In this document: positions 1,540-61,728 of the stretch, one piece after another | Numbering within the stretch: position 1 is the first letter of the stretch | How the letters are laid out: every line of letters starts with the position of its first letter | Virus record (IMG/VR): IMGVR_UViG_3300030294_000005 | Coordinates: 62,001 to 126,000 of that record | Reading direction: 5' to 3' (one strand) | Length of the DNA stretch: 64,000 nucleotides | Made by a program: the position numbers and the translations under genes | Notes under the pieces: generated by a model | The model's input: the letters and a program-made list of their open reading frames with translations, nothing else | What the model was told of the DNA's origin: nothing | The model's database searches: none

Positions 1540-1551
1540 AACATTAGTATA
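1540..1551 (+). promoter_or_regulatory. Putative late promoter AACA-N6-TA
   Basis: AACA-TTAGTA-TA just upstream of the RBS of 1580; matches the AR9 late consensus. Confidence 0.65.
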
Positions 1552-1579
1552 ATAATAAAAAAAGGGAGAGATTAAAATT

Positions 1580-2311
1580 ATGCAAAATCAAAACCAAGCT
1601 CAAGCACAGAAAACAACAACAACACCAGCCCAGGAGGAACCATTAAGTTTAGATGTAGAACCAATCAAATTTGATGGGCTAATTAAATCAAAATTAATCA
1701 CAACTATAGGTATTGGAAAATTAGTTTGGGAATTATTTAAACCAGTATTCCCAGAGTATGAAGGATGCATTATTCAGCCAGATCAATATGGCCAGTTACA
1801 AATAACTTTATACTTTAAAGATAAAGGAAAATTAACTGATACTAATGCACTTAAGGCTGTCACTCCTATTGGATTGAATCAGCATAGTAGTAGTGCTTAT
1901 GAAAAAATTGCAGCAATTAATCAGAGATTTTCTGCTAGTAAATTTGAACTTACTAAAGATGCCAAGGAAATTCTTGGAGAGTTTTATTGGGTAAGAAACA
2001 ATGGAAAAGTTCAATGGAGTCAAGTTGTAAATGAAGTTACATCTCAAGATTACAATGGTTATTCAGTTCATTTAAAAGTAACTGGATTAGACCTTACTAG
2101 AGTATTAAGAAAAATCTATGGCTTTAAAATCGATGGAGCAAGAGTTGATTATTCAGTATCTATTATAAAACCAATTGGAATGGATAATACTGGACTACTT
2201 CAGAACTACCTAATTAGCATTCAGCAGTTAGATACTAGAGAAGTTGAAAACTTGGCCAAAGAAGTTGGAGTTATCCCTATTCAGGGTTCAATCCCAATGC
2301 TTAAAAACTAG
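1580..2311 (+). CDS. Hypothetical phage protein (both promoter types upstream, own terminator)
   Basis: 243 aa ORF, GGGAGAG RBS, followed by a hairpin terminator. Confidence 0.75.
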   Translation: MQNQNQAQAQKTTTTPAQEEPLSLDVEPIKFDGLIKSKLITTIGIGKLVWELFKPVFPEYEGCIIQPDQYGQLQITLYFKDKGKLTDTNALKAVTPIGLNQHSSSAYEKIAAINQRFSASKFELTKDAKEILGEFYWVRNNGKVQWSQVVNEVTSQDYNGYSVHLKVTGLDLTRVLRKIYGFKIDGARVDYSVSIIKPIGMDNTGLLQNYLISIQQLDTREVENLAKEVGVIPIQGSIPMLKN

Positions 2312-2345
2312 CTTACTAAGAACAATTTGAACTAAAATAGTTTAA

Positions 2346-2373
2346 TATGAGAGTGTGTAATAACACTCTCATA
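2346..2373 (+). terminator. Intrinsic terminator
   Basis: TATGAGAGTGT-loop-ACACTCTCATA followed by a T-rich tract. Confidence 0.75.
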
Positions 2374-2414
2374 AATTTTATTTTTTTAAATTATAGCTTA
2401 GGGGATGTTTTAAT

Positions 2415-2810
2415 ATGGATATAAAATATAGTATTCAAGATGGAATAGATAAATTGTTTGACGAAAAAGGAAATACTTTTTTAGCATTGAGAAAGATATC
2501 ATGGGGTGAAAGTACAAATGCTAAATATGATTTAAGAAAATGGTATATTAGCAAAGATGGAAATGGAGAAACTGTTGGAAAGGGCTTCTCATTTTTAACT
2601 GACGATGGACCATCAGAACTTACTCATGTCTTATTAGAATCTGGATTTGGAGAAACTAAAAAGATCATAGATACTATTAAAACAAGAGATGATTTTAATT
2701 CATCATTAGTTAATAGTTTAAGTAAAAAGGAACTATCCGATACTGGATTAGATATAGGGCCAGAAGAAGATGATGAAGATTTATATGATCCTTCAGCAAT
2801 ATTTGAATAA
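2415..2810 (+). CDS. PC4/YdbC-like ssDNA-binding protein
   Basis: LRKISWG...KYDLRKW...GKGFSF signature of the YdbC/PC4 fold; acidic C-terminal tail as in SSBs. Confidence 0.7.
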   Translation: MDIKYSIQDGIDKLFDEKGNTFLALRKISWGESTNAKYDLRKWYISKDGNGETVGKGFSFLTDDGPSELTHVLLESGFGETKKIIDTIKTRDDFNSSLVNSLSKKELSDTGLDIGPEEDDEDLYDPSAIFE

Positions 2811-2824
2811 GAGGTGATATTAAA

Positions 2825-3881: not shown

Positions 3882-3893
3882 AACATAATAATA
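3882..3893 (+). promoter_or_regulatory. Putative late promoter AACA-N6-TA (overlaps hairpin 3890-3910)
   Basis: AACA-TAATAA-TA upstream of 3937. Confidence 0.6.
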
Positions 3894-3936: not shown

Positions 3937-5121
3937 ATGGATGCATTCAGATATAATATAAATATGAGCTATATGTATAATAATAAAGAATATGTTATAG
4001 ACTCAACTAATATAACAAATTTTGTAATTGACTATTCATATGATACTAGAAATATGCCTATATTATTTGTAACAACATCTATAGATAAAAAAGTAGTAGA
4101 TGATATGATTAAGAATAGTAGAACAAAAACAATAATATTAACTATATCCAAGTATACAAAAGATTCATCTATAACTATTCAAAAGAATTATATACATGAT
4201 GAATTTATGTATTTCTTATCAGATGATTTAAATAATGTAGATGATTTGGATTATAGTGATAGTACTGCTAATTCAAAAGATATATATAGAAAGATAACTA
4301 TAGGAATGATAGATTTGAAATTGATGAATAATAATAAGAAATTAATAAATGAAGTATTCATTAATACAAATTTATTAGATATCGTTTTAAAAAATACATC
4401 TCATATGAATTTACTTATAGAACCTATTCCAGACTTATTAGTACCAAGATTAATTATTCCTCCATTAACTTCAATAAGTAAATATATAAAGTTCATAGAT
4501 AGTTATAATAGTTTATATCCTACAGCATATAGATTATTCTATGATTTTAATAGAACTTATTTATTAAGTTCAGCTGGTAATAATATTCCAGCAAAAGGAG
4601 AAAATATAAATTCAATAATAATAAATGTAAGCAAGAGTACTACAGCAGATTCTAAAGTACAAGGTATGCATATAGATAAACCTGGTAAAGCATATATAAT
4701 AGAATTATCTGACACTGATATAAAATGTCTAGAAGATAAAGCTACTGATATATCATATAATAAAATAATTGGAATTGCAAGTGATGGAACATATAGATCT
4801 GTAGACTTAACTCTTCAGACTCCTGTAAAAAACTCATCAGAAAAGGTTAGAATAGAAATGATGACTAATGATAATATAAAACAAGTAGATAATATAAAAG
4901 CAGATATATTAAATTCTTCAATGAGTTTATACTTTGCTAAAACAGAGTTAGACACTTCTATACTAACATTGAATAGAAAATTTATAGTAAAAAATTATGC
5001 TAGACTTTATAACAAGGATGGTGTATTTATTTTATCTTCTAAAAAAGAAATATATACTCCAGACAATGGTTCTTTTATATTAACAACTATGATAACTTTA
5101 AAAAAAGCAATAGTATCCTAG
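3937..5121 (+). CDS. Probable virion structural protein (baseplate hub-like)
   Basis: 394 aa, beta-rich composition, late promoter; function inferred from context only. Confidence 0.4.
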   Translation: MDAFRYNINMSYMYNNKEYVIDSTNITNFVIDYSYDTRNMPILFVTTSIDKKVVDDMIKNSRTKTIILTISKYTKDSSITIQKNYIHDEFMYFLSDDLNNVDDLDYSDSTANSKDIYRKITIGMIDLKLMNNNKKLINEVFINTNLLDIVLKNTSHMNLLIEPIPDLLVPRLIIPPLTSISKYIKFIDSYNSLYPTAYRLFYDFNRTYLLSSAGNNIPAKGENINSIIINVSKSTTADSKVQGMHIDKPGKAYIIELSDTDIKCLEDKATDISYNKIIGIASDGTYRSVDLTLQTPVKNSSEKVRIEMMTNDNIKQVDNIKADILNSSMSLYFAKTELDTSILTLNRKFIVKNYARLYNKDGVFILSSKKEIYTPDNGSFILTTMITLKKAIVS

Positions 5122-8640: not shown

Positions 8641-9714
8641 TTATTTTGAATAGTCTTCGTATGAACTAATAAAGTCGTATTCAGCTACTTCACCAAAAGC
8701 TTCTGCTAATACTGCACTTTCTTTAACTGACTTAGGATTGAAAGCTGCACATTGACCATAAACACGTCTACTCTGCCCAACCATTTTCTTAGTAAGATCC
8801 ATATCTGCTTTTATAATCATATTAGCAGCTGTTTGCATAACTTCTACAACTCTTCTTGCAACATTTGCTTTCTTACTCATACCTGATGCAGTTGCTGCTT
8901 TATTATCATCTTTATCAAGGGATGCAGTAGTTTGTTCTTTACTGAATGCATCTATTGCTTTAAGAGCAGCTTTAAACATAGTATCTGTTTCAGTCTGCAA
9001 TTTATTAATTCCTTTAGTTACTTCACCTTCATTAGTTAAATATGAAGTTATTGTACGAAGAACACCATCAGAAAGACCAGTAACTTCTTCTTCATCTTCA
9101 AATACAACTTTTTCATAATCTTTATAGAAGTCTTCTTTAGTTGTACTAGGAGCTGCTTTTTGTAAATATTCATTTAACTCGTCACCATTATCTAATTTTG
9201 TTATAATAGCATCAAGATTATCTACTTTCTTGATATCACCTAATTTACTTGATGCTGCAGTAGTTATACCACCAATAGCATCTGCTCCAGCTAGTTTGTC
9301 AGAATGGAAAGTTCTCCATTTAAATTTCATTTTTGAATAGTCTTTTCCGACTACATCTTTTTGATATTTCTTAACAAACTCTTTGCTATCTCTCATAACA
9401 ACATTGCTAAATTTAACAAGAAAAGATTTAAAAATACCTTTAATCTTCTCCCAGCATTTCATAATAAATTCTTTAATGCTGTCAATAATGTTTCCAGCTT
9501 CTTGAACTAATTGAGCAGATTCCTCTACTGCAGCTCCAGGGGTAGCTTGTGAAAAATCATTTGCAATGATTGCTTCGAATATAGCTTGGTCATTCTTAGT
9601 ATTGTCAATCATCATTTCTAGTAAACCTGTTTGATGAGTATAGCTTTCATTAGCAACGACTTCTTCGCCACTATAGTTTCCTAACTGTGTCCTATTGTTT
9701 GAATAAACACTCAT
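8641..9714 (-). CDS. Internal head protein, paralog 1
   Basis: VQE/AGNIIDSIKEFIMKCWEKIKGIFKSF, clearly similar to 7600..8619; C-terminal VKES. Confidence 0.65.
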   Translation of the reverse strand: MSVYSNNRTQLGNYSGEEVVANESYTHQTGLLEMMIDNTKNDQAIFEAIIANDFSQATPGAAVEESAQLVQEAGNIIDSIKEFIMKCWEKIKGIFKSFLVKFSNVVMRDSKEFVKKYQKDVVGKDYSKMKFKWRTFHSDKLAGADAIGGITTAASSKLGDIKKVDNLDAIITKLDNGDELNEYLQKAAPSTTKEDFYKDYEKVVFEDEEEVTGLSDGVLRTITSYLTNEGEVTKGINKLQTETDTMFKAALKAIDAFSKEQTTASLDKDDNKAATASGMSKKANVARRVVEVMQTAANMIIKADMDLTKKMVGQSRRVYGQCAAFNPKSVKESAVLAEAFGEVAEYDFISSYEDYSK

Positions 9715-9761: not shown

Positions 9762-9773
9762 TATTAATATGTT
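9762..9773 (-). promoter_or_regulatory. Putative late promoter AACA-N6-TA
   Basis: Minus strand AACA-TATTAA-TA ahead of the internal-head cluster. Confidence 0.65.
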
Positions 9774-9817: not shown

Positions 9818-10846
9818 TTAGAATAATGCAGACGAAGCAGAATCTGGTATAGAGTCAGACAATTCATTTGTCTTATATTTCTTATTATCGTCAGATAAAT
9901 CTTTTGTAGCTTTAACTTCGCACTCTTTATTAGAAATTGCTATAGCATTAGATGCTTTTCTAAATAAGTCCACAATTTTAAATTGTTTCTTAGAGATTCT
10001 ATCTCTGTCTTCCTTATTTAACTCTTCGTTACTCTGAAGATTATAAGCATTCATTTGTAACAAATTAGCTTGAATATCAAAATAATCAGATACTCTTACC
10101 TTGCTATAATAAAAGAAGAATATTAGTTCTCTTATAATAGGAATTATATTTAATAATATTCCTATAATAGCTAATCCTCCAGCTACAAGGCCAATATCAA
10201 CTCCAGTAAAGTTCTTTATATTATTCTTTAACAAGAATTCCAATCCATTATCTATCTGATTTTTATCACATGCTTTATTAAATTTAGCAAGGTTATCAAA
10301 TAGTAAATTCTGCTTAGTTCTTGTTAATGATAACTTATCAACTATAACGTCGAAAGTCTCATCGGTTGGAGTTTTTATAAAGTCTATACAAGATGCAATC
10401 ATAAATGATATACTACTTACTATTGCCAATGTTATAGATGAATAGGTAACCATTATAAATTCAATATTATATCTGAATCCTTTTTCAAATAGTTCCTTCC
10501 TATCCTTTACATTTTCAAATGCTTCTTCTATATTTTTAATAGGGGTTAAGTCCTGTTTATATTCAAGAAGAAGATCATGCATTACTTGTAAACAATTAGA
10601 TAATTTATCGTAACTGTCTAGTTTAGTTATATCACCTTTTGTTTCTGGAATATTACCAAAATCAATATCATCAACCTTATCTACTATATGATCATATAGT
10701 TTAGAAGTTAAGTTAGTTAGTACTTGATTTTGATCAGCTTCATCTATTGCCAATAATACTTTTCTTGTTTCATCATGGGTAATATCAAAGTATTCATCTA
10801 TTACTTTATCAAATCCAGGAATTTTATACTGTTGCATATTTTTCAC
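9818..10846 (-). CDS. Probable virion protein with two hydrophobic helices
   Basis: FIMVTYSSITLAIVSSISFMIA and IGLVAGGLAIIGILLNIIPII; lies in a late operon. Confidence 0.55.
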   Translation of the reverse strand: MKNMQQYKIPGFDKVIDEYFDITHDETRKVLLAIDEADQNQVLTNLTSKLYDHIVDKVDDIDFGNIPETKGDITKLDSYDKLSNCLQVMHDLLLEYKQDLTPIKNIEEAFENVKDRKELFEKGFRYNIEFIMVTYSSITLAIVSSISFMIASCIDFIKTPTDETFDVIVDKLSLTRTKQNLLFDNLAKFNKACDKNQIDNGLEFLLKNNIKNFTGVDIGLVAGGLAIIGILLNIIPIIRELIFFFYYSKVRVSDYFDIQANLLQMNAYNLQSNEELNKEDRDRISKKQFKIVDLFRKASNAIAISNKECEVKATKDLSDDNKKYKTNELSDSIPDSASSALF

Positions 10847-10853: not shown

Positions 10854-12251
10854 TTATCTAGCAATCTTAGTCATAAGATTTATTACCTTTTTATACCCAC
10901 CATCAGAAGTTTCTCTTTCTAGCAATGTGAATGACATTGTTTCATAGATATCGTCTCCTGTATCAAATATAAATTTAGCAACCTCCATAGTTTCATCTAC
11001 TATACAAAATCCCATTAGATTATAGGATTCCATAATTGGTCTAATGATCTTAGGATCTTCTATATTTATATTTTCATTCTTCTTTAAGTATTCCACTTCT
11101 TCTTGTGAAACAACTAAAGTAGATATGGCACTAGCATCATTTGATTTCCCCATTGATCTTCTTATTTTACTTTTTATAGAACGTCGTTCTAATATCTTCC
11201 ATAACTTAGAAGATGAACCTCTTTTAGATTGGGATAGTGCATCAATCTTAGCTCTATCAATTGCAAATATAAAATCTTTAAAGAAACTAATTTCTCTAGT
11301 AGTTGCTTTAATGAATTTTAATAATCCATTATGATCTTCATTCTTTAATGATAATCTGTTTATGATATCAGTAGAATCTAATGTATACATTTTAGCTTTA
11401 ACACCAATTACCATATTCTGATAAATTGGATCTCCTGTAGAATTATCAATGTAGTTTATAACCATCATTGTTGGAATTAATTCATTAGCTTTTTTAACAT
11501 CAGAATCTAGTATTTGAGATTGTTTCATTTCTTGAGAAGTTTTCATTATTGTTACTTTATCTTTAGCTTGAGAATAATAATCTCTATCAGATTTAGCAGG
11601 TGGGTCTGGAACATCAACAAAGTCATCAGTACTCTTAGTTCTAGTAACTACTTCACCACTAGTATTCATAAATTCTGATCTATCAGATGTAGATCCAACT
11701 TTTAATTTAGCTTCTCTCATAATAGTAGGTTCGCCAAAATATGATTGTGGATAAACTTTAAAATCAGATATTGATTGTTCTGATATACTATCAGGTAATA
11801 CAAAGTTTATATTTTTCATATCTTCTTTTACTTGTTCATAAAGCAATCTATTATCATATGAAATTACTGATTCATTTTTTATTACATAATGATCCATAGC
11901 ATCCATAAAATTATCTACTGTAATAGTATCGTCTATCTTTAAATTTGTATGAAAGTTCTTAAGATATTCAATACCATTTTTAGTATCGGTAATATTTATT
12001 GCACTAAATAGCATTTGTAACATACTTGTAGCTTTTCTTTCCATTGATTTTGTAATCATACTAGCATTTTCAATATTCATATTTTTACTACATAATACTG
12101 GGAATACTAATGTAAGATTAGAAGATGCTTTAGCTATAGAACTAAAACTTTTATCTCTATTTTTTAACCATTCGACTTCATCAGATTTTTTGATGTCTGA
12201 TAATACATCTATTATATCTCTTATAACAGTTTCATGTATTTGTTCATACAT
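10854..12251 (-). CDS. Probable virion structural protein
   Basis: 465 aa, late promoter, KNES and MREA sites, adjacent to the head-protein cluster. Confidence 0.5.
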   Translation of the reverse strand: MYEQIHETVIRDIIDVLSDIKKSDEVEWLKNRDKSFSSIAKASSNLTLVFPVLCSKNMNIENASMITKSMERKATSMLQMLFSAINITDTKNGIEYLKNFHTNLKIDDTITVDNFMDAMDHYVIKNESVISYDNRLLYEQVKEDMKNINFVLPDSISEQSISDFKVYPQSYFGEPTIMREAKLKVGSTSDRSEFMNTSGEVVTRTKSTDDFVDVPDPPAKSDRDYYSQAKDKVTIMKTSQEMKQSQILDSDVKKANELIPTMMVINYIDNSTGDPIYQNMVIGVKAKMYTLDSTDIINRLSLKNEDHNGLLKFIKATTREISFFKDFIFAIDRAKIDALSQSKRGSSSKLWKILERRSIKSKIRRSMGKSNDASAISTLVVSQEEVEYLKKNENINIEDPKIIRPIMESYNLMGFCIVDETMEVAKFIFDTGDDIYETMSFTLLERETSDGGYKKVINLMTKIAR

Positions 12252-12278: not shown

Positions 12279-12290
12279 TAATCTTATGTT
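12279..12290 (-). promoter_or_regulatory. Putative late promoter AACA-N6-TA
   Basis: Minus strand AACA-TAAGAT-TA. Confidence 0.65.
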
Positions 12291-12379: not shown

Positions 12380-12577
12380 TTACTTAAAACTTATTATAGA
12401 TCTTTTCGCCCAATTTGGGGTAGGTATAAATTTATATACTCCTGGAGCTATATATATTTTTTTAGACTCAAACTCTTTTTCTAATTTATCATACTTCTCC
12501 TTTTCTTTTAATTTCTGAGCCTCTTCATATTGTTTTACAACTCCAAAATAATCTTGTCCTGTGTACATACCATACAT
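12380..12577 (-). CDS. Small hypothetical protein ending KRSIISFK
   Basis: GGGGG RBS; AACA-N6-TA at 12591-12602 and early motif at 12679-12688 upstream. Confidence 0.65.
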   Translation of the reverse strand: MYGMYTGQDYFGVVKQYEEAQKLKEKEKYDKLEKEFESKKIYIAPGVYKFIPTPNWAKRSIISFK

Positions 12578-12712
12578 ATCATATTCCCCCTAATTAAATG
12601 TTAAATACTATTATGTGGGAGGGAATTTTTCTATATAAAGTATATTCAATTTATAAGCTCTTTATTTCTTACACTTGTATAATATATAATTAAAATATCA
12701 TTTAGTATATTA

Positions 12713-12724
12713 AACATTAGAATA
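12713..12724 (+). promoter_or_regulatory. Putative late promoter AACA-N6-TA
   Basis: AACA-TTAGAA-TA upstream of 12760. Confidence 0.65.
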
Positions 12725-12759: not shown

Positions 12760-13707
12760 ATGAACCTTAATTTTAACGATTTTGCTAATGAAGCTAGGAA
12801 TGCTGGATTATATCCTAGACAGGAAATTAATAATTATACTAAGTTTGCAAGATTTGGTAATTTTTTAGATCCATCATCTATAGTAACATATGCAAGAGAA
12901 TATATATTTTTTACAAAACCAGATTTACATTTATTTAATAATGGAGATCCAGCTATACTAAATCCTGAAATATCAAACATTGCATTCTTTACAGAAATGC
13001 AACAAAGATATAATATAATTTTAAAACAATTACAAATAAGTGCAAAAGGGAATGTAAGTCCTTTTATTAATCTATTAACCAACTCTGCTAATAGTGGACT
13101 AGATTTACCTGCATTAGATTCATTAGAAATGGAAACAGGAGCTAATATATATGGAGAACTAATAAAATATAGATGGATGTCATTAGATACACCACATGAA
13201 TTCTCTGTAGAATTTTTAGATAGTAAGTATCTTGAGATTTATTTATTATGTAAGACTTGGGAAGAATATGCTAGAAAAAAATCTATAGGATTGGTTACCC
13301 CTCCTAATGATTCATATATAATAGATAAAGTTTTACATGATCAAGTATCTGGATATAAAATTATAGTAGGAGAAGATGGTGAAACAATAATATATTATGC
13401 TAAATTATATGGTGTATATATAAAGAATGTTCCAAGAGATGTATTTTCAAACTTTAATTATAAAGATGGATATATATCATTATCATTATCATTCAGTGCT
13501 GATTTTGTAGAAGATATGGACCCATCTATATTAGTAGATTTTAATGAATTAACAGCACCATATGCTGGTGGTCCAAATATACCTATATATGATAAAACTA
13601 ATCATATGGTAAATGGGCAACTTGTAAATATGCCATATATTCAATATATTCCAAAAGGTGATACTTCTATAAGTAGATATTCTTATTACAAATTAAAATG
13701 GCGTTAA
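12760..13707 (+). CDS. Tail tube-like/baseplate protein
   Basis: YIFFTKPDL, FSVEFLD and YYAKLYGVY.KNVP pattern resembles T4 gp19/gp54-type tube folds; upstream of the wedge gene. Confidence 0.5.
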   Translation: MNLNFNDFANEARNAGLYPRQEINNYTKFARFGNFLDPSSIVTYAREYIFFTKPDLHLFNNGDPAILNPEISNIAFFTEMQQRYNIILKQLQISAKGNVSPFINLLTNSANSGLDLPALDSLEMETGANIYGELIKYRWMSLDTPHEFSVEFLDSKYLEIYLLCKTWEEYARKKSIGLVTPPNDSYIIDKVLHDQVSGYKIIVGEDGETIIYYAKLYGVYIKNVPRDVFSNFNYKDGYISLSLSFSADFVEDMDPSILVDFNELTAPYAGGPNIPIYDKTNHMVNGQLVNMPYIQYIPKGDTSISRYSYYKLKWR

Positions 13708-13720: not shown

Positions 13721-15058
13721 ATGGGATTAAATAATCATTCAGTATTCTTATTAAATGATAGTACAGTGAAGGCAGTAGGATCTAATAGCAATGGACAATG
13801 TGGGGTTGGATCTATAACCCCTACTAATCAATTAGCTTTATATCTTATACCAAGTCTTAATAATGTAAAACAAATAGCATGTGGTACTAGTTATACTATA
13901 TTTTTATTGAGTGATGGTACAGTAAAAACTATAGGATCTAATGGTTTTGGACAATGTGGCACTGGTAATATTACTACACCACAATTAACTTTATACGCTA
14001 TACCTAGTTTAACTAATGTAAAACAAATAGCATGTGGAAGTGCATTTTCGGTATTTTTATTAAATGATGGTACAGTAAAAACAATAGGAGATAATAGCTT
14101 TGGACAATGCGGTAATAGTGCAACTACTGGTACTAATCAATTAACTTTATTTACTATACCTAGTTTAACTAATGTAAAATCAGTATCATGTGGTAGTAGT
14201 CATTTAGTATTTTTATTAAATGATGGTACAGTAAAAACAGTAGGAAGAAATTTTTTCGGGCAATGTGGTACTGGTACTACTACTACTCAAACAGTACCAT
14301 TTATTATGCCAGGATTGACTAATGTAAAACAAGTAGTAGCTGGTAATGGTCATTCTGTCTTCTTATTAAACGATGGAACAGTAAAAACTATAGGACAGAA
14401 TGATGGCGGACAATGTGGTACTGGTAATACCACTACACCACAATTATCTTTATATACTATACCAAGTTTAACTAATGTAAAATCAATATCATGTGGAGCT
14501 TATCATAATGTATTTTTATTAAATGATGGTACGATAAAAACAGTAGGTCAGAATGATAGTGGGCAATGTGGTACTGGTAATACTACTACCCCACAATTAA
14601 CTTTATATACTATACCAAGTCTTAGTAATGTAAAACAAATATCATGTGGACAAAGTAATTCAATTTTCTTATTAAATGATAACACAGTAAAAGCAATAGG
14701 ATATAATAATTATGGACAATGTGGTAATGGTAGTACTAATGCAGTGCAATTAACTTTATATACTATACCTAGTTTAATTATTAAATGTTTATGGGATAAT
14801 GTACTAATAATTATTATAAAATATTTAATAAAACAATATTCAGCATACTATTCTATTAAGTCAACTTATTATGATGGATCAAATTATAAACCATTAACTC
14901 TAACTGGTGGATCTGTACCTAATAAAGCTGATATAGAATTATATGGATTTGACAGTATTAATGATCTTAATACATCAATCACCATAGGAAGTGAAACCTT
15001 TAAACCAATAAATAAATTACTTAATATATTTAGTATAAAAGAATATATAAGTAAATAA
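13721..15058 (+). CDS. RCC1/BLIP-II repeat beta-propeller protein
   Basis: Seven repeats of about 52 aa: VKQIACG..HSVFLLNDGTVKT.G.N..GQCG.G. Confidence 0.9.
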   Translation: MGLNNHSVFLLNDSTVKAVGSNSNGQCGVGSITPTNQLALYLIPSLNNVKQIACGTSYTIFLLSDGTVKTIGSNGFGQCGTGNITTPQLTLYAIPSLTNVKQIACGSAFSVFLLNDGTVKTIGDNSFGQCGNSATTGTNQLTLFTIPSLTNVKSVSCGSSHLVFLLNDGTVKTVGRNFFGQCGTGTTTTQTVPFIMPGLTNVKQVVAGNGHSVFLLNDGTVKTIGQNDGGQCGTGNTTTPQLSLYTIPSLTNVKSISCGAYHNVFLLNDGTIKTVGQNDSGQCGTGNTTTPQLTLYTIPSLSNVKQISCGQSNSIFLLNDNTVKAIGYNNYGQCGNGSTNAVQLTLYTIPSLIIKCLWDNVLIIIIKYLIKQYSAYYSIKSTYYDGSNYKPLTLTGGSVPNKADIELYGFDSINDLNTSITIGSETFKPINKLLNIFSIKEYISK

Positions 15059-46834: not shown

Positions 46835-46918
46835 CCGCCAGTGGAAATCAATCCACTGGCGAGTATGCAATAAAGGAAAACATAAAGAGTAGAAGAACAA
46901 AGCGTTTAAATTATAGTT
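46835..46918 (-). ncRNA. Candidate small RNA (AACT-N6-TA promoter, about 75 nt, GC-rich hairpin)
   Basis: Promoter-like motif at 46907-46918, no ORF, ends at CGCCAGTGGA-loop-TCCACTGGCG plus a T-tract. Confidence 0.35.
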
Positions 46919-46921
46919 ATA

Positions 46922-47036
46922 AAAATATATAATGATTCCTTTCAGAATCATTATATATATGATAAAATTTTAGGAGAGCTTTAAAAAAATGAAATATTAA
47001 TTACTATGGATAATTAAAAAGATTTACTATATAGTT
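46922..47036 (-). ncRNA. Candidate small RNA containing anti-SD CUCUCCU
   Basis: AACT-N6-TA at 47025-47036, no ORF, ends at hairpin 46925-46959 plus TTTTT. Confidence 0.3.
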
Positions 47037-47788: not shown

Positions 47789-47798
47789 TATATATTAT
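47789..47798 (+). promoter_or_regulatory. Putative early promoter TATATATTAT
   Basis: Located at the strand switch, upstream of the plus-strand early block. Confidence 0.55.
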
Positions 47799-47837
47799 AT
47801 GTATGTAAGAATAATAATAAATTTATAAAATGAAAGG

Positions 47838-51361: not shown

Positions 51362-51447
51362 TTAGTAATAATTTTTTAATTATATCAGATGCGTAATTGC
51401 ATCTGATATTTATTTTTTAACATTATTATAATAGGAGGTGATTAAGT

Positions 51448-52224
51448 ATGCGTGATCCATTAGGACTAATGGAAGCTGAAACAAAAGATCAACCATTTTC
51501 TGTAATAAAATTAGATAGTATACCAGATTTTGATATTGAAGATTATGATTTAATGGATTCAAAAGAATTTCAAAAATTTTTATATTCAATAGAAAATATT
51601 GCTAGAGTATCGTTTGAATATAGAGCTATAATAGCATATCTAAGAGAAAATATGGATATGAATAAATGTAGTGTTTTCGAAAATATAAATAATATAGATA
51701 CTACAAAAGTTAAAATAGAAATTCATCATCATCCATTTTCATTATATGATATAACTATTATTGTATATAATAAGAGGTTATATAATAGAGAATCTATAGA
51801 TGAAGAATTAGTTGCAAAAGAAGTTATGTATTTACATTATGCACTACTAATTGGATTAATACCATTATCAGAAACTGTTCATGAATTAGTTCATAATCAA
51901 TATCTATTTATACCAAATAGTAATGTTATGGGAAAATATGAAGAATTCTATAATATGTATAAAGATTTTATGACTCCAGAGAATATAGATATATATGAAA
52001 GAACTGTTGCTTTTAGTAATTCATATGATGAATCTAAACAAAATCATATATTAGATAAAAGCTATATTTATGTAGATTTAACTGGTTCTTATGACATTCC
52101 TACTTATCAAAGTGTAATAGATTCAATGAGTCATAAAATAAAAGAATTAAAATCTAGTAATAATGTAGATATGACGTTTGAATTACCAAAAAAGAAGAGA
52201 GTTATAAGTTTCTTAGATAAATAA
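51448..52224 (+). CDS. HNH-fold protein (late)
   Basis: KC...IEIHHHP...LIPLSETVHELVH; AACA-N6-TA at 51419-51430. Confidence 0.55.
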   Translation: MRDPLGLMEAETKDQPFSVIKLDSIPDFDIEDYDLMDSKEFQKFLYSIENIARVSFEYRAIIAYLRENMDMNKCSVFENINNIDTTKVKIEIHHHPFSLYDITIIVYNKRLYNRESIDEELVAKEVMYLHYALLIGLIPLSETVHELVHNQYLFIPNSNVMGKYEEFYNMYKDFMTPENIDIYERTVAFSNSYDESKQNHILDKSYIYVDLTGSYDIPTYQSVIDSMSHKIKELKSSNNVDMTFELPKKKRVISFLDK

Positions 52225-52275
52225 ATATATTTTACTGAAACATACTATTAAAAAATAATTAGGAGGTATTATAAA

Positions 52276-52908
52276 ATGATTAAAAAACACATGCTTTCAA
52301 TTTTAAGCGAAGCAGCTAATGCTGAAAAAAGAGATGCTACTCATGATTTTGAATATGATGACTACGAAAGTAATATTACTTTAAATAATGATGGTGAAGC
52401 TTCTGGAGATACTAGTAGTAATAATGCTAACGATGATGAAGATGAAGACTGTTCTGTTGATGATGATGATTTAGAAGATATCAGCGATGAAGATATGGAA
52501 CAACTTAAAAATGACATTATAGCTAGTTATAATGACATGGATAGTGTTGATAATACAGATCTTAACTATACTGCTGAAATGGTTACAGTTATTGCATCTA
52601 AAGATGGAGAATATCTTGTTGAGTGTGATAACTTAGCAAAATTAATGAATTCTGAAAAATGTGATGGTTATACCGCAATGCAAAAAATAAGTGAAGCTAA
52701 TAATATTCCATTAGCTGAAATGAAACTAGTTGTAGAATCTAATGATGCTATAATTTCATTACTTAATGAAAAAGCAGTATCTAGAAAAACTAGAAAGAAG
52801 AAAACTTTAGATATGAAATCTTCTGCAATCTTCTTACAAGATATTAAGAATAAAGGTATAACTGTTCTTAAGAAAAAGAGTAGAAAGAAGAAAAGTAAGA
52901 AAAAGTAA
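52276..52908 (+). CDS. Late protein with acidic region and poly-Lys C-terminus (possible internal DNA-binding protein)
   Basis: D/E-rich N-terminal half, KKKSRKKKSKKK tail, LSEA and VVES sites, AACA-N6-TA at 52239-52250. Confidence 0.55.
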   Translation: MIKKHMLSILSEAANAEKRDATHDFEYDDYESNITLNNDGEASGDTSSNNANDDEDEDCSVDDDDLEDISDEDMEQLKNDIIASYNDMDSVDNTDLNYTAEMVTVIASKDGEYLVECDNLAKLMNSEKCDGYTAMQKISEANNIPLAEMKLVVESNDAIISLLNEKAVSRKTRKKKTLDMKSSAIFLQDIKNKGITVLKKKSRKKKSKKK

Positions 52909-52925: not shown

Positions 52926-53010
52926 AACATATAAGTAAATAATCAATCCATCTTTCATATTATTATTTTTTATAAAGTATAGATAGTTAATTCTATCTAT
53001 ACTTTAATAT
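52926..53010 (+). ncRNA. Candidate short transcript (late promoter directly followed by a terminator)
   Basis: AACA-TATAAG-TA at 52926-52937, no ORF, hairpin at 52974-53006. Confidence 0.25.
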
Positions 53011-53030: not shown

Positions 53031-53483
53031 ATGGGTAACAAATTAAAAGTATTTCTAGGGGGTACTTGTAACAACTCACTATGGAGAGATAAACTAATAA
53101 AATTACTAAAGATAGACTATTTTAATCCAGTTGTAGATGATTGGACAGAAGATTGTCAAAAAGAAGAAATAAAACAGCGTGAGCTTTGTGACTATTGTTT
53201 ATACACTATAACTCCATTTATGCTTGGAGTATATTCTATTGCTGAAGTTATTGATGATAGTAATAAAAGGCCAGATAAAACGTTATTTTGCATATTAGAA
53301 AATGAATCATCATTACCTAATGGATTAGCTAATCCTACAAATCCTACAACATCATTTACTATAGGTGCACTTAAATCATTAGATTCAGTTGGTAAAATGG
53401 TTCTTAGAAATGGAGGTAAATATTTTAAAAATTTAGAAGAGGTTGCGGCCTTTTTAAATTCTCAAAATATGGACAAGCTATGA
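53031..53483 (+). CDS. Nucleoside 2-deoxyribosyltransferase-like protein
   Basis: KVFLGG....WR......YFNP.VDDW...YSIAE signature. Confidence 0.75.
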   Translation: MGNKLKVFLGGTCNNSLWRDKLIKLLKIDYFNPVVDDWTEDCQKEEIKQRELCDYCLYTITPFMLGVYSIAEVIDDSNKRPDKTLFCILENESSLPNGLANPTNPTTSFTIGALKSLDSVGKMVLRNGGKYFKNLEEVAAFLNSQNMDKL

Positions 53484-54327: not shown

Positions 54328-54369
54328 TATAATTATATATTATAACTATGAATAAAAAAAGATTGGAGA

Positions 54370-54654
54370 TTGATTAAAAAAATGAAGAAAAATATTATTA
54401 TTCCTATCGCTATAGCTATCATCATTCTATGTTCTATGCCATTAGTAATTATGAATTTTATGTCAAATGATCAAACACCAATTAGTTATGTAAACTATAC
54501 TATGAGTGACTATGATACTTTAGAATCAGTATCAAGTAGATACAAACCTGATAATATGAGTTTACAAGAATATCTAGGTAAAGTGGAAATAAAGAGTAAT
54601 CTAGCTCAAAGACCACAACAAGGAACACTTATATCATTACCAGTTTATAAATGA
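54370..54654 (+). CDS. Membrane-anchored LysM-like protein (YneA-like architecture)
   Basis: N-terminal TM helix then Y.M..YDTL.SV..RY...QG..I.LP; early motif at 54334-54343. Confidence 0.55.
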   Translation: MIKKMKKNIIIPIAIAIIILCSMPLVIMNFMSNDQTPISYVNYTMSDYDTLESVSSRYKPDNMSLQEYLGKVEIKSNLAQRPQQGTLISLPVYK

Positions 54655-54749
54655 AAAAAAGAGTAGAGAGAAATCTCTACTTTATTTTTTTTAATATTTC
54701 TTTAAATTATATATTATAATATTGAATAAATAATAAAGGAGATGATAAA

Positions 54750-55007
54750 ATGATAAATAATAAATTACCCAATCCTAATTATAAAGAACGTATTAGGAGA
54801 ATTGCAGGAGCTAATGTAAAAACCTCAGAGAATATGGACAAATGGCCTGATGATGTAGTTTATACCATATATTCTAATGAGGTTTTAGAAACGTTACCAG
54901 TTATTATTTTGGAACAAATGAGAAATCATATACAAAGTGTTATAGATAAAGCTATAATTATGAAGGTGGAAGATACAAATATAGAGAAGAAGGATAGATT
55001 AAAATGA
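54750..55007 (+). CDS. Hypothetical early protein
   Basis: AAGGAG RBS; early motif at 54708-54717. Confidence 0.6.
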   Translation: MINNKLPNPNYKERIRRIAGANVKTSENMDKWPDDVVYTIYSNEVLETLPVIILEQMRNHIQSVIDKAIIMKVEDTNIEKKDRLK

Positions 55008-57870: not shown

Positions 57871-57880
57871 CATATATTAT
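57871..57880 (+). promoter_or_regulatory. Putative early promoter CATATATTAT
   Basis: Upstream of the kinase operon. Confidence 0.55.
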
Positions 57881-57932
57881 AAATGTGAATAAATATAATA
57901 ATTTTAGATGATTTATTTAAGGAGGGGTTAAT

Positions 57933-58694
57933 TTGCTTAATGACTACTATTCTCCTATTAATAATATGCCTAATAATGGATATGGAATTCAACCAAATCC
58001 GATAGGAAATATTTTGAATATAGGGCAGCAAGGTTATAATGGTGGATATTATAATAATACTTATAATAATTATTATAATCCTTATCTTGCCATAAAAAAT
58101 CATGAATTAATGCAAACACAATTAAGAGAAGAACAAAGAGTTCAATCTTCAATGATGATGATGATAAGTAAAGCTGTAAATAAAGCAGCTGGACAAGAAA
58201 TGCCAAATGAAAGATTAGAAGAGTTGTATGGATATAAAGATCCAGAACGCTATGTTCCTAAGCCAGATAGTATGGAATATGAACAGAATTTAATAGTTGG
58301 AATGTATTTAAATGAAAGTAATTATTTACCACAAGATATTCAATATATAAATTATTTTAATTCAATGTATGATACTGCTAAACAAGAATGTCCAGACAAT
58401 ATTTCAATGTATGATTATAATCAAAAGATGTCAGAGAAGTATGTAAAAATGCTTGTTGATATTGATAAAGAGAAACAAAAAGATGTAAGTAAATTATACA
58501 ATAACAAAGATTATAATAAACTATTAGATATGAATTCTAATGGAAGCAGTTATTTTAATAGTATATTCAATGGAGCAAATGGTAATAGCAATGTATCTAT
58601 AGATGATATGGAAGTTACATTACCAGCTCATTTATCAAATGAATATCAATCAAGAAGAAAACAATTCTTAGATGCAATACTAAATAAGAAATAG
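57933..58694 (+). CDS. Protein with N/Y/G/Q-rich prion-like N-terminus
   Basis: First 50 or so aa: NNMPNNGYGIQPNP...GQQGYNGGYYNNTYNNYYNPY; TTG start after GGAGG. Confidence 0.7.
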   Translation: MLNDYYSPINNMPNNGYGIQPNPIGNILNIGQQGYNGGYYNNTYNNYYNPYLAIKNHELMQTQLREEQRVQSSMMMMISKAVNKAAGQEMPNERLEELYGYKDPERYVPKPDSMEYEQNLIVGMYLNESNYLPQDIQYINYFNSMYDTAKQECPDNISMYDYNQKMSEKYVKMLVDIDKEKQKDVSKLYNNKDYNKLLDMNSNGSSYFNSIFNGANGNSNVSIDDMEVTLPAHLSNEYQSRRKQFLDAILNKK

Positions 58695-59585: not shown

Positions 59586-60131
59586 ATGATAATGGTATTA
59601 AAAAGAGGAAATAATGTAGTTAATAATGTACCACAGGTTGCTATTGATGAAGAAATTAATGAAGAGAAAAGTTATTCAAATGTATTAAATGTAAAAGTCA
59701 ATAAAAAACCAGGAATACCTAATCGTATTCCTAGCGAGTCAGATGATAGAATAAATCAAGGTATACTAGAGGAAGAGCATAAAGACTTTAAATTTAATAC
59801 AGCATCTAATTTTATACCAACTCCAACTACTAAAAATAGTGCAGAAAATGCACTTGGAGCTTATGGATTAAGTGATAAAGATTTTGAAGAAGAAGAAACA
59901 TCTGCTCCAAAAATAGTAGATAAATATTCTAATATAAATAAAAAAGATGCAGGTATATTATATAAAAATTCAGTGCCTGTAGATAATGTAAAAGCTGGTG
60001 ATGTTAAATCAGAAGATGTAGAAACTAAAGATGAAATATCAATAGAAGAAAAATATGCTGATCTTGCAAACCCAGAAGATTATGATAGTGTTCAGAAAAT
60101 ACAAAGACGAAAAAATATAGAACAATATTAA
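59586..60131 (+). CDS. Probably disordered acidic protein
   Basis: Low hydrophobicity, rich in E/D/K/N/S/T/P. Confidence 0.65.
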   Translation: MIMVLKRGNNVVNNVPQVAIDEEINEEKSYSNVLNVKVNKKPGIPNRIPSESDDRINQGILEEEHKDFKFNTASNFIPTPTTKNSAENALGAYGLSDKDFEEEETSAPKIVDKYSNINKKDAGILYKNSVPVDNVKAGDVKSEDVETKDEISIEEKYADLANPEDYDSVQKIQRRKNIEQY

Positions 60132-60145
60132 AATAAAAAGGATGC

Positions 60146-60799
60146 GTGATGAAAATGTTTAAAGGAACATTATTTATAACAACAGATGTAAATATATTAC
60201 AGCAATTAGTATATAATAATAAAGTAATTATTATTGGAGAACCAGATCCAGCAATGATTAATGCATTAAATGCTGTAGTTGGGAGTATATTACTTCCTCC
60301 ATATTTAGCTATGATGGCACAGATGGATGGAAATATTAATGAATTTTATAATCAATACTATCTACATCTATATACAAAAGAGCCACAAGAGTTTATAGCT
60401 ACAATATTAAAAGCTTTAACCCTTGGAAAAAATATAGTTATGTATTGTACTGAAGATGAATTTAAATTATGCGGTCAATTCTTATTACAATTCTTACAGA
60501 AAGATTTTGGGATAGTAGTAGGAACGCAAAACAATCAATTCTATTTTGATCCAGCATATACACCTACAGTAACTACATTACTATATATAAATGATCTAGT
60601 TACTGCAGATGAATTATTTATGTTGTATCCAGATACTATTCCAATCAATGATATAATATTACCAAAACTAGTTCAAGAACTTCATCCAGTTGTAGATGAA
60701 CAAACTAAAGATTCATATTTGAAATATTTTGGCGATTTAAATCATAGGGTTAAATTAAATCATAAATTTAGAAAGTCCCCAATATCAATGGGGATGTAA
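60146..60799 (+). CDS. Hypothetical protein, DUF488-like pattern (paralog A)
   Basis: LLPP...F...Y..HL.......I...L..GKNIVMYC. Confidence 0.45.
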   Translation: MMKMFKGTLFITTDVNILQQLVYNNKVIIIGEPDPAMINALNAVVGSILLPPYLAMMAQMDGNINEFYNQYYLHLYTKEPQEFIATILKALTLGKNIVMYCTEDEFKLCGQFLLQFLQKDFGIVVGTQNNQFYFDPAYTPTVTTLLYINDLVTADELFMLYPDTIPINDIILPKLVQELHPVVDEQTKDSYLKYFGDLNHRVKLNHKFRKSPISMGM

Positions 60800-60801
60800 T
60801 A

Positions 60802-61278
60802 ATGCTTGTATTTGGAGATTATAATAGTTTACCTAGAGATGATAGATTTGTAACATTCAATTTATCATCTTTAATAGAGGGATTTGAAATGATAAATATA
60901 GTCCCTCCGTTTATAAAACAATTTAATGATGAAAAGCAATTTGATATAACATATGCAAATTATCTTATATCAGATGATAATGCTTTTTATGAAATGATGA
61001 AAGTTATTATGAGTATATATATGGCTAAGAATGTATATATACTTGTGACAAAGGACGAAACTAGTATCTTTGAGATATTAACGGAATCGTTTCAAAAGTT
61101 TATTCAACAAAGGTACGGAGTAATATCTAGTAATATAAATTGTATTGAAGATTTAGAATATATAGATGATAATCAACAATTTTCTATACAAGGTCTATTT
61201 AATTTAGATATTGATAAAACTAGATTTTGCTATATGTACTATACAAAGTATCCAGAAGAGTTAAAAGTGGAAGAATAG
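60802..61278 (+). CDS. Hypothetical protein, DUF488-like pattern (paralog B)
   Basis: IVPP...F...YANYL......M.VI..I...KNVYIL; aligns by eye with 60146..60799. Confidence 0.45.
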   Translation: MLVFGDYNSLPRDDRFVTFNLSSLIEGFEMINIVPPFIKQFNDEKQFDITYANYLISDDNAFYEMMKVIMSIYMAKNVYILVTKDETSIFEILTESFQKFIQQRYGVISSNINCIEDLEYIDDNQQFSIQGLFNLDIDKTRFCYMYYTKYPEELKVEE

Positions 61279-61328
61279 AGATATTCTTCTGCTTATATTT
61301 TTTTATTTACATAGAGGAGAATAGATAA

Positions 61329-61700
61329 ATGCTATATTATGATAAAGTACCAAATAATATATTGGTTCTTAGAGAGAAAGAAATATCTGTAATTGAATTT
61401 ATAGATTTATTTAAAGAATATGAAAATAATGATGTATTAGTAAATACATTTACTCAAGGATTTTGTTATTGGTTTGCTTTTATATTAAAAACTAGATTTA
61501 AAGATAGTGAAATATATTATAATACTGAAGATCATTTCATGATTAAATTAAATGATAAACTTTATGATATTACTGGAGATTGTACTGATAATTGGAATAA
61601 TAATTGTTTATATTTATGGAATGATTTTATTATTAAATATCCAAACGAATCTAAATGTATAATCAGAGATGTCATAGAAAAGAAAAATACTAAATTTTAA
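61329..61700 (+). CDS. Small papain/transglutaminase-like Cys-His-Asp protein
   Basis: F..G.CY.FA..L, then HF.I, then LYDITG. Confidence 0.5.
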   Translation: MLYYDKVPNNILVLREKEISVIEFIDLFKEYENNDVLVNTFTQGFCYWFAFILKTRFKDSEIYYNTEDHFMIKLNDKLYDITGDCTDNWNNNCLYLWNDFIIKYPNESKCIIRDVIEKKNTKF

Positions 61701-61728
61701 ATCTAAGATTAACATTTTATTAAAAGAG

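What the first reader, a model, noticed from the sequence alone, without database searches (positions are those of the whole stretch)
1540..61722. Over 20 copies of the AR9-type late promoter AAC[A/T]-N6-TA define the late regulon
Seen, in the orientation of the downstream gene or unit and usually within about 50 nt of a start codon. Plus strand: 1540, 3882, 12713, 17629, 36489, 51419, 52239, 52926, 61711. Minus strand: 9762, 12279, 12591, 20607, 22294, 33113, 33548, 34745, 34972, 43510, 46016. AACT variants: 36452, 46907, 47025. Known: Bacillus phage AR9 non-virion RNAP recognises AACA-N6-TA/G. This predicts an AR9-like nvRNAP and promoter-specificity subunit elsewhere in the genome, and assigns many unknown ORFs to the late class.
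Basis: partly seen in the sequence, partly recalled or inferred. Interest (0 to 1): 0.6.

Follow-up and report, generated by a model that had tools for sequence, protein, structure and literature searches.

The report
AR9-type jumbo-phage polymerase promoter motif
A short DNA signal (AACA, six bases, TAA) sits just upstream of about 70 genes of an uncultivated 236-kb jumbo phage that also encodes the AR9-like second RNA polymerase and its specificity subunit, so this is a new, distant member of a known phage promoter system, possibly working on thymine instead of uracil DNA.

Summary
All 23 listed sites are at the stated coordinates. The bare pattern is not more frequent than chance in the window (78 vs 92±9). 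Its placement is far from chance: 71 of 173 upstream regions of the 236-kb genome carry AACA-N6-TA in the gene's orientation, against 12.6±3.4 in shuffles (window: 21 of 41 vs 3.0±1.7).

An unbiased gapped-word scan ranks it first, as it does in AR9 itself and in 59 related metagenomic loci. The consensus here is AACA-t-N4-a-TAA, a median of 28 nt before the start codon. AACT is a real minor variant.

The genome encodes all four AR9-like non-virion RNAP subunits, four virion RNAP subunits (one in the window) and a gp226-like specificity subunit. The family profile of that subunit hits only AR9 gp226 in the PDB (E 5e-21).

Virion, lysis and virion-RNAP genes carry the motif. The non-virion RNAP genes carry an AR9-like early motif instead. 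Replication genes also carry AACA, so "nvRNAP-dependent" is safer than "late".

The phage has ThyX and thymidylate kinase and lacks the dU-DNA enzymes, so recognition may be on thymine DNA. No transcription start was mapped.

The parts
1540..1551 (+). AACATTAGTATA(A); predicted +1 at 1551; 28 nt before the 243-aa gene 1580..2311. An early-type motif also lies upstream at 1470.
3882..3893 (+). AACATAATAATA(G); 43 nt before the 394-aa gene 3937..5121 (AR9 g218 homolog). Overlaps the 5' arm of the terminator-like hairpin 3887-3913.
9762..9773 (-). AACATATTAATA(A); 47 nt before the 357-aa gene 8641..9714.
12279..12290 (-). AACATAAGATTA(A); 27 nt before 10854..12251 (virion structural protein, AR9 g214 homolog, phrog_23804). 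Heads a unit that includes 9818..10846 (AR9 g215 homolog).
12591..12602 (-). AACATTTAATTA(G); 13 nt before the 65-aa ORF 12380..12577.
12713..12724 (+). AACATTAGAATA(A); 35 nt before 12760..13707 (virion protein, AR9 g213 homolog). The unit continues into the RCC1-repeat protein 13721..15058 and 15072..17630 (AR9 g212 homolog).
17629..17640 (+). AACATAGTAATA(A); 24 nt before the 307-aa gene 17665..18588.
20607..20618 (-). AACATATAATTA(A); 32 nt before 19873..20574 (RusA-like resolvase, phrog_140).
22294..22305 (-). AACATATAATTA(A), directly after a GGAAGGGT..ACCCTTCC hairpin; 20 nt before 20636..22273 (virion structural protein, AR9 g205 homolog).
33113..33124 (-). AACATTATAATA(A); 27 nt before the 3582-aa gene 22337..33085 (N-terminus matches the AR9 tape measure protein g204).
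33548..33559 (-). AACATTATAATA(A); 13 nt before a 25-codon ORF with a ribosome-binding site, and 86 nt before 33174..33461.
34745..34756 (-). AACAAAAATCTA(A); 29 nt before the 173-aa gene 34194..34715.
34972..34983 (-). AACATATATCTA(A); 38 nt before a small ORF (34793..34933/34966).
36452..36463 (-). AACT variant AACTATAATATA(A); 34 nt before 36142..36417, the first gene of a minus-strand unit with no other motif. Supported as a variant promoter.
36489..36500 (+). AACAATCTATTA(A); 36 nt before the virion RNAP beta-like gene.
36537..41780 (+). Virion RNA polymerase beta-like subunit, 1747 aa (AR9 g189 homolog; phrog_3148, E 1e-140). The part of the two-polymerase system that lies inside the window, itself behind an AACA site.
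43510..43521 (-). AACATATTAATA(A); 25 nt before 41823..43484 (553 aa, fn3/SusE-like domains).
46016..46027 (-). AACAGATTAATA(A); 29 nt before the ThyX-like gene 44760..45986.
46907..46918 (-). AACT variant AACTATAATTTA(A); 158 nt from the next start codon. Followed after about 45 nt by a 12-bp GC hairpin plus U tract. Doubtful as a gene promoter; possibly a short non-coding unit, or chance.
47025..47036 (-). AACT variant AACTATATAGTA(A), overlapping the stop of the thymidylate kinase gene; 276 nt from the next start. Probably chance.
51419..51430 (+). AACATTATTATA(A); 17 nt before 51448..52224 (AR9 g242 homolog, phrog_12252).
52239..52250 (+). AACATACTATTA(A); 25 nt before the 210-aa gene 52276..52908.
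52926..52937 (+). AACATATAAGTA(A); 93 nt before the 150-aa gene 53031..53483 (long leader).
61711..61722 (+). AACATTTTATTA(A); 15 nt before the small gene 61738..62007.
1470..1484 (+). Early-type motif TATATTAT-N5-TG (AR9 early/virion-RNAP promoter type) upstream of 1580..2311.
12672..12686 (-). Early-type motif TATATTATacaagTG upstream of 12380..12577.
35702..35716 (-). Early-type motif gattaTATATTATaactaTG; 33 nt before the start my gene model places for the gene in ORF 35016..35753.
44008..44022 (-). Early-type motif TATATTATatataTGaata upstream of 43730..43987.
44726..44740 (-). Early-type motif aattaTATATTATaataaTGaata upstream of 44385..44696.
46784..46798 (-). Early-type motif aattaTATATTATaacaaTGaataaa; 42 nt before 46290..46748.
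47791..47805 (+). Early-type motif TATATTATatgtaTG heading the plus-strand block of small genes from 47838.
54336..54350 (+). Early-type motif aattaTATATTATaactaTGaataaa upstream of 54370..54654.
54710..54724 (+). Early-type motif aattaTATATTATaatatTGaataaa upstream of 54750..55007.
57873..57887 (+). Early-type motif aatcaTATATTATaaatgTGaataaa upstream of 57933..58694.
44760..45986 (-). ThyX-like flavin-dependent thymidylate synthase, 408 aa (Pfam Thy1, 106 bits). Context for the uracil/thymine question.
47035..47745 (-). Thymidylate kinase homolog, 236 aa (Pfam Thymidylate_kin 61.7 bits; phrog_761). Context for the uracil/thymine question.

Best explanation
The AACA-N6-TA(A) sites are promoters read by this phage's own non-virion multisubunit RNA polymerase (nvRNAP). 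That enzyme has four split beta/beta' polypeptides plus a gp226-like, sigma-like specificity subunit, and is homologous to the enzyme of Bacillus phage AR9.

By analogy with AR9, the holoenzyme recognises the complement of AACA at -11..-8 on the template strand and starts at the A of TA, giving leaders of about 13-50 nt (inferred, not shown here).

The program would run as follows. A virion-packaged RNAP reads the second motif (aATTATATATTAT-N5-TGAATAAA, the AR9 early type) and transcribes early genes, including all five nvRNAP genes. The nvRNAP then transcribes virion, lysis and virion-RNAP genes, and here also the replication genes, from about 70 AACA/AACT sites.

Shown: the motif, its placement, the polymerase and specificity-subunit genes, the gene-class pattern, and conservation across the clade. 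Inferred: the start site, the timing, and which strand is read.
For: 1. Placement and specificity
- 71 of 173 upstream regions hold the motif in sense vs 12.6±3.4 in shuffles.
- It is the top strand-biased word in an unbiased scan.
- Only AACA / N6 / TA is biased.
- A at position 13 in 57 of 61 sites; median 28 nt to the start codon.

2. Positive control
- The same scan on AR9 returns its experimentally defined late promoter AACA-N6-TA as top word, 61 vs 24 (consensus in PMC7598289, PMC9209446).

3. Machinery
- Four nvRNAP and four vRNAP subunit homologs by tblastn to AR9 (E 1e-24 to 1e-95) and by PHROGs.
- gp226-like gene in AR9 synteny.
- Its family profile hits only 7S01_A/7UM0/7UM1 (AR9 gp226), E 4.9e-21, full length.
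- AR9 gp105 R363, which stacks on the -10 base, lies in a conserved block GxYR.

4. Gene classes
- 22 of 24 homologs of AR9 virion, lysis or vRNAP proteins are in AACA-headed units. One of the two exceptions has an AACT site.
- All five nvRNAP genes are in units headed by the early-type motif, the AR9 logic.

5. Selection and conservation
- The motif is depleted inside genes, most strongly on the antisense strand.
- In 59 non-redundant related loci (GC 22-40%) AACA-N6-TA is again the top word, 217 vs 48, with 55 of 59 loci sense > antisense.
- It is kept before the ortholog of g037 in L017 although the flanks differ.

6. No sigma-70 signal
- No -35-like conservation.
- No excess of sigma-70-like sites, 167 vs 178±14.
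Against: - No transcription start, RNA or time-course data.
- The specified part of the motif is short, and 121+60 copies lie inside genes. The 12-mer alone cannot be sufficient.
- The gp226-like gene is interrupted by a 589-nt insertion in this genome. The subunit needs splicing, or works as two pieces.
- AR9 nvRNAP needs uracil at -11/-10 of the template strand (PMC9209446). This genome has ThyX and thymidylate kinase and no Dcd/Dtm/Ugi homologs, so the recognition chemistry may differ.
- Replication genes also carry the motif, unlike the AR9 record, where early promoters are annotated before the DNA polymerase genes.
Confidence: 0.85

Rival explanations
1. The sites are -10-like elements of host sigma-A/sigma-70 promoters, and the phage relies on host RNA polymerase for these genes.
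For: The N6 part is A/T-rich and sometimes reads TATAAT (for example AACATATAATTA). The likely hosts are low-GC bacteria with TATAAT -10 boxes.
Against: - The invariant letters are AACA and TAA, not TATAAT.
- There is no conservation at -35: information is 0.2 bit or less at every position upstream.
- Sigma-70-like sites are not enriched (167 vs 178±14).
- The phage carries two complete RNAP sets.
Confidence: 0.03
2. The motif is read by the virion RNAP, or by an unknown factor, rather than by the nvRNAP/gp226-like holoenzyme.
For: Nothing here links enzyme to site directly. The assignment rests on homology with AR9.
Against: - A separate, much longer motif matching AR9's virion-RNAP early promoter exists: 71 of 87 copies are intergenic.
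- That early motif heads the nvRNAP genes, while AACA heads the virion RNAP genes. This is the expected feed-forward order.
- The AACA consensus is the one bound by AR9 gp226/gp105 in solved structures (PMC9209446).
Confidence: 0.05
3. The pattern is a by-product of A/T-rich intergenic composition or of an RNA-level signal (leader or processing site), not a DNA promoter.
For: The raw frequency in the window is not above chance (78 vs 92±9). Intergenic DNA is very A/T-rich.
Against: - Dinucleotide shuffles of the same intergenic regions give 12.6±3.4 against 71 observed.
- The C is invariant in a 26% GC genome.
- The distance to the ribosome-binding site varies (13-60 nt).
- The motif is most strongly avoided on the antisense strand of genes, where no mRNA-level signal could act.
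- It is conserved across genomes of 22-40% GC.
Confidence: 0.02

Closest known systems
Late promoters of Bacillus phage AR9/PBS1 read by the nvRNAP-gp226 holoenzyme (5'-A(-11)ACA-N6-T-A/G(+1); PMC7598289, PMC9209446)
   Same: - Same core AACA, same six-base spacer, same TA.
- Same lack of a -35 element.
- Homologous four-piece nvRNAP and gp226-like subunit (profile E 4.9e-21 to 7S01_A).
- nvRNAP genes sit behind an AR9-like early motif.
- Virion and vRNAP genes sit behind AACA.
- Some genes carry both promoter types, as in AR9's 'continuous' class.
   Different: - Proteins are only 24-40% identical to AR9's.
- +1 is always A and is followed by A (57 of 61). AR9 uses A or G and has no conserved position 13.
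- AACT is tolerated.
- Replication genes also carry the motif.
- The genome has ThyX plus thymidylate kinase and lacks AR9's Dcd, Dtm and Ugi, so uracil dependence is doubtful.
- The residue equivalent to the uracil-selecting V206 is not conserved in the family.
- The gp226-like gene carries an intron-like insertion.
phiKZ late promoters (5'-TATG-3' at the start site) read by the phiKZ nvRNAP with gp68 (PMC7598289)
   Same: Same overall two-polymerase strategy. The fifth subunit is structurally related to gp226. The DNA contains thymine.
   Different: Different consensus (TATG at the start site, nothing at -10). The closest relatives of the RNAP here are AR9/PBS1, Staphylococcus S6-like phages, Listeria LPJP1 and Yersinia phiR1-37, not phiKZ.
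AR9 early promoters (AAATATATATTAT-N5-G, annotated in KU878088)
   Same: The second motif found here, aATTATATATTAT-N5-TGAATAAA, shares the TATATTAT core and the spacing to G.
   Different: The downstream block TGAATAAA is longer and more conserved here.
Bacterial sigma-70 extended -10 promoters
   Same: A short A/T-rich element about 10 bp upstream of the start. gp226 has a sigma2-like fold (PMC9209446).
   Different: A different invariant core (AACA). Recognition is on the template strand in AR9. No -35 element and no TATAAT requirement.

Membership tests
AR9-type nvRNAP promoter | Consensus 5'-AACA-N6-T-A/G with fixed six-base spacing | tested here: met
   AACA-N6-TA is the top strand-biased word, and other spacings and variants are not biased. 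G at +1 is not used (1 case).
AR9-type nvRNAP promoter | Located upstream of, and co-oriented with, genes for virion and other late proteins | tested here: met
   22 of 24 homologs of AR9 virion, lysis or vRNAP proteins are in AACA-headed units. The motif also precedes replication genes. 71 of 173 upstream regions vs 12.6 expected.
AR9-type nvRNAP promoter | Genome encodes the four split beta/beta' nvRNAP subunits | tested here: met
   tblastn to AR9 g089, g105, g154 and g270 with E 3e-95, 4e-42, 4e-43 and 2e-33. PHROGs RNAP families, E 3e-17 to 1.5e-104.
AR9-type nvRNAP promoter | Genome encodes a gp226-type promoter-specificity subunit | tested here: met
   Syntenic gene. Pairwise E 5e-8 (N-terminal part) and 2e-4 (C-terminal part). 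The family profile hits only AR9 gp226 in the PDB, E 4.9e-21, covering 17-458 of 464. The gene is interrupted by 589 nt in this genome.
AR9-type nvRNAP promoter | Transcription starts at the last base of the motif (+1 = A/G) | not testable with these tools
Leaders of 13-50 nt would fit.
AR9-type nvRNAP promoter | Recognition depends on deoxyuridine at -11/-10 of the template strand (dU genome) | tested here: inconclusive
   - The base content of the DNA cannot be read from sequence.
- Gene content argues against a dU genome: ThyX-like and thymidylate kinase are present; Dcd (PF00383), Dtm (PF06941), Ugi and AR9 g151/g221 homologs are absent.
- The V206 equivalent is variable and does not track ThyX/Dcd in relatives.
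AR9-type nvRNAP promoter | nvRNAP genes themselves are early, behind virion-RNAP promoters | tested here: met
   All five nvRNAP genes lie in units headed by TATATTAT-N5-TG.
Takahashivirus (AR9/PBS1) lineage | Close sequence relationship to AR9/PBS1 | tested here: not met
   No nucleotide match in the phage collection. 55 shared genes at about 21-43% amino-acid identity. It is a distant relative within a large uncultivated clade.

The most novel reading that the evidence does not exclude
This phage, and most of a large uncultivated clade of 200-340-kb phages, uses the AR9-type template-strand promoter AACA-N6-TAA with a gp226-like subunit on ordinary thymine DNA. The clade has more than 430 gp226-like proteins, and 28 of 37 near-complete genomes carry ThyX. 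If so, the uracil dependence described for AR9 would be a lineage-specific refinement, not a built-in property of this promoter-recognition system. Discrimination against host DNA would then need another mechanism.
Probability: 0.5. Interest if true: 0.6.

Novelty: new member of a known kind. Interest (0 to 1): 0.42.

Why it matters
The AR9 late promoter and its template-strand, uracil-specific recognition are known from one small group of cultured phages. Here the same consensus, the polymerase and the specificity subunit appear in a very distant relative and across dozens of uncultivated jumbo-phage genomes. This has three practical consequences.

- It gives a ready transcription map for these genomes: about 70 nvRNAP promoters and about 70 early promoters in this one.
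- It shows that, contrary to the general experience quoted in PMC7598289, the non-early promoters of this clade can be found by sequence alone.
- It assigns many unknown ORFs to polymerase-specific classes.

The presence of ThyX and thymidylate kinase makes a concrete question testable: does this promoter system work on thymine DNA, and if so, what replaces uracil as the self/non-self mark?

Tried and rejected
- Whole-window over-representation of the motif: rejected (78 vs 92±9). Only position and orientation carry the signal.
- Megablast of 8 kb against cultured phages: no match.
- PHROGs and Pfam on the two gp226-like ORFs, and single-sequence phmmer against the PDB: nothing. Homology only appeared with pairwise BLAST plus synteny and with the family profile.
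- The search for related loci with a single virion protein: no relatives. The gp226 family alignment worked.
- Using the residue equivalent to AR9 gp226 V206 to infer U or T specificity: rejected. The position is variable (T, I, G, V, P, A, K, L, R) and shows no relation to ThyX/Dcd content.
- Rfam on the 589-nt insertion: only a sub-threshold group I hit (14 bits, E 0.92). Rfam on the 46740-47050 spacer: nothing meaningful.
- One Rfam call and one compare call (23) went to the wrong input and are void.
- One related contig could not be fetched because the file was too large.
- The gp226-like gene was analysed exon by exon, by reference. I built no joined sequence.
- Only genetic code 11 was used.

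Full report
**Source and setting**

The window is bases 62001-126000 of a 236,184-bp IMG/VR virus record (CheckV completeness 95%) with 26% G+C. I built a simple gene model of 286 genes covering 92% of the genome. It has no nucleotide match among cultured phages.

**The observation**

The bare pattern is not over-represented: 78 matches in the window against 92±9 in dinucleotide shuffles. What is far from chance is where the matches sit.

- Of 173 upstream regions in the genome, 71 carry the motif in the gene's orientation, against 12.6±3.4 (maximum 24) after shuffling the same regions. In the window it is 21 of 41 against 3.0±1.7.
AACA-N6-TA came first, 67 vs 17.
- No other first-block variant, spacing or final dinucleotide shows such a bias. 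AACA-N6-TG occurs once.
- Flanking positions that were not searched for are informative: A at position 13 in 57 of 61 sites, T at position 5 in 42 of 61, A at position 10 in 43 of 61. Nothing is conserved upstream.
- The median distance to the start codon is 28 nt.
- AACT-N6-TAA is a genuine minor variant: 15 sense, 0 antisense in the last 75 nt before starts, against 3.3±1.8 in shuffles. Typically it sits before genes with no other motif.
- Inside genes the motif is rarer than in synonymous-codon shuffles (sense 121 vs 146, z -2.5; antisense 60 vs 93, z -4.3). Control patterns are not depleted. This points to selection against spurious sites on the DNA.

**What reads it**

I fetched AR9 (KU878088) as an annotated reference. 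tblastn finds 55 shared genes at about 21-43% identity.

| Role | Gene here (genome coordinates) | AR9 homolog |
|---|---|---|
| nvRNAP beta C | g235, 184671-186854 | g089 |
| nvRNAP beta N | g241, 191090-192826 | g105 |
| nvRNAP beta' C | g286, 234093-236159 | g154 |
| nvRNAP beta' N | g179, 139748-141265 | g270 |
| vRNAP | g043 | g145 |
| vRNAP | g117 (window 36537-41780) | g189 |
| vRNAP | g166 | g264 |
| vRNAP | g222 | g078 |

PHROGs confirms all eight.

The specificity subunit was harder to find.
- Between the homologs of AR9 g227 and the primase, where AR9 has gene 226, lie two ORFs (23681-24616 and 25185-25757). They align collinearly with the gp226 N-terminal region (E 5e-8) and C-terminal domain (E 2e-4).
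- The first ORF has more than 430 metagenomic homologs, mostly uninterrupted proteins of about 500 aa.
- A profile of 32 of them hits a single PDB sequence, AR9 gp226 (7S01_A, 7UM0, 7UM1), at E 4.9e-21 over residues 17-458 of 464.
- AR9 gp105 R363, which stacks on the -10 base in the promoter complex (PMC9209446), lies in a conserved GxYR block.

**Program logic**

A second motif, aATTATATATTAT-N5-TGAATAAA, matches the early promoters annotated in AR9 (AAATATATATTAT-N5-G). Of its 87 copies, 71 are intergenic.

- All five nvRNAP genes lie in units headed by this early-type motif.
- All four vRNAP genes, and 22 of 24 homologs of AR9 virion, lysis or vRNAP proteins, lie in AACA-headed units. One of the two exceptions has an AACT site.
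- Window genes behind AACA sites include virion structural proteins, the 3582-aa tape-measure-like protein and the vRNAP beta subunit.

This is the AR9 scheme described in PMC7598289. However, DnaB, both DNA polymerase genes, SbcD, RecD and an SF2 helicase also have strong AACA sites, and 42 genes sit behind both motif types. 'nvRNAP-dependent' is therefore a safer label than 'late'.

**Controls and conservation**

- The same unbiased scan on AR9 recovers its experimentally defined late promoter as top word, 61 vs 24.
- In 59 non-redundant IMG/VR loci around gp226-like genes (GC 22-40%), AACA-N6-TA is again first, 217 vs 48, with 55 of 59 loci biased to sense. AACA-N7-AA is second, so the TAA ending is clade-wide.
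- In L017 the ortholog of g037 keeps AACA-N6-TA although the flanks differ.
- Sigma-70-like sites are not enriched in window 1-20000 (167 vs 178±14). Terminator-like hairpins are enriched (13 vs 3.8±2.1), and several AACA sites directly follow or overlap them.

**Uracil or thymine?**

AR9 nvRNAP requires deoxyuridine at -11/-10 of the template strand. V206 of gp226 excludes thymine and is invariant in close homologs from dU phages (PMC9209446). dU-DNA phages use a dCMP-deaminase-family Dcd and a dTMP or dTTP hydrolase (PMC12697855).

- This genome has a ThyX-like gene (window 44760-45986, Pfam Thy1 106 bits, with an RHR..S motif) and a thymidylate kinase (window 47035-47745).
- It has no ThyA, dUTPase, dCMP deaminase, NT5C, UDG or thymidine kinase, and no homolog of AR9 Ugi, g221 or g151.
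- Among 37 near-complete relatives, 28 have the ThyX-like gene and 5 have the deaminase. AR9 as control has the deaminase and no ThyX.
- The residue aligned with V206 is variable and does not follow ThyX/Dcd content, so it tells nothing.

Thymine DNA is the more likely reading. It is not shown, and the ThyX-like protein is atypical (about 130-aa insertion).

**Limits**

No transcription start or timing data could be obtained. The start site, the strand read and the temporal class are inferred from AR9.

**Verdict**

The finding is correct, and its prediction is fulfilled. It is a new, distant member of the known AR9-type promoter/polymerase system, with a possible thymine-DNA twist.

Noticed in passing
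genome 24608-25196 (outside the window; L008 2608-3196): The gp226-like specificity-subunit gene is split by a precise 589-nt ORF-less insertion. An uninterrupted 87%-identical relative (P0003, 494 aa) aligns 1-308 and 309-494 on either side with no residue lost. The upstream exon ends in T and the insertion ends in G, as in group I introns; Rfam gives only a weak 3'-half hit. About 15% of family members in the search list are similarly truncated near residue 310.
   Followed up: yes
genome 230480-231603 and 31453-32570 (outside the window): Two paralogous copies of the insertion's ends (70-80% identity) flank HNH endonuclease ORFs. One is inside the split DNA polymerase gene (g281|g283), the other is next to the virion RNAP beta'N gene (g043). 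Together with the gp226 insertion this makes a three-member mobile intron family in essential genes.
   Followed up: partly
window 44760-45986 (-) and 47035-47745 (-): A ThyX-like protein of 408 aa has a roughly 130-aa insertion between the Pfam-matched parts and an RHR-X6-S motif. A thymidylate kinase lies two genes away. The long ThyX form recurs in 28 of 37 related genomes (open frames 386-494 aa) and is absent from AR9.
   Followed up: partly
window 46822-46918 (-): An AACT-type site is followed after about 45 nt by a 12-bp G+C hairpin and U tract (MFE -25.3 kcal/mol, z -6.2). It lies in a 286-nt spacer with no convincing ORF. It could be a short non-coding transcript or just the terminator of the upstream gene.
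   Followed up: partly
window 13721-15058 (+): A 445-aa RCC1-repeat (beta-propeller) protein (Pfam RCC1-like domain, E 3e-104) sits within a virion-gene unit behind the AACA site at 12713.
   Followed up: no
window 3882-3913 and 2346-2373 (+): Two AACA matches overlap terminator-like hairpins. At 3882 the predicted start falls inside the 5' arm, so a transcript started there could not form the full hairpin, while read-through RNA could. The match at 2362 lies inside the hairpin itself and may be fortuitous.
   Followed up: no
genome 50567-51613 and 213489-215621 (outside the window): Two separate genes match different parts of the AR9 large terminase: g073 the N-terminal part and g265 the C-terminal part. 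They lie about 160 kb apart. This could be a paralog or a split gene; I did not resolve it.
   Followed up: no
L018 (277-kb relative), e.g. 5100-5216, 14650-14745, 15670-15793 region spacers: A third repeated upstream element (TTTGTTTTTTTTTTGTACTTCTAAGTAATTATTATTTTTAGGAGG) precedes many small genes in this relative. It is not seen in the window's genome and may be another promoter class.
   Followed up: no
related records G004, G005, G034 (loci L027, L028, L086): These three relatives have a dCMP-deaminase-family gene and no ThyX, the AR9-like (dU) pattern. Most of the clade is ThyX-positive and deaminase-negative. The clade may contain both DNA chemistries.
   Followed up: partly
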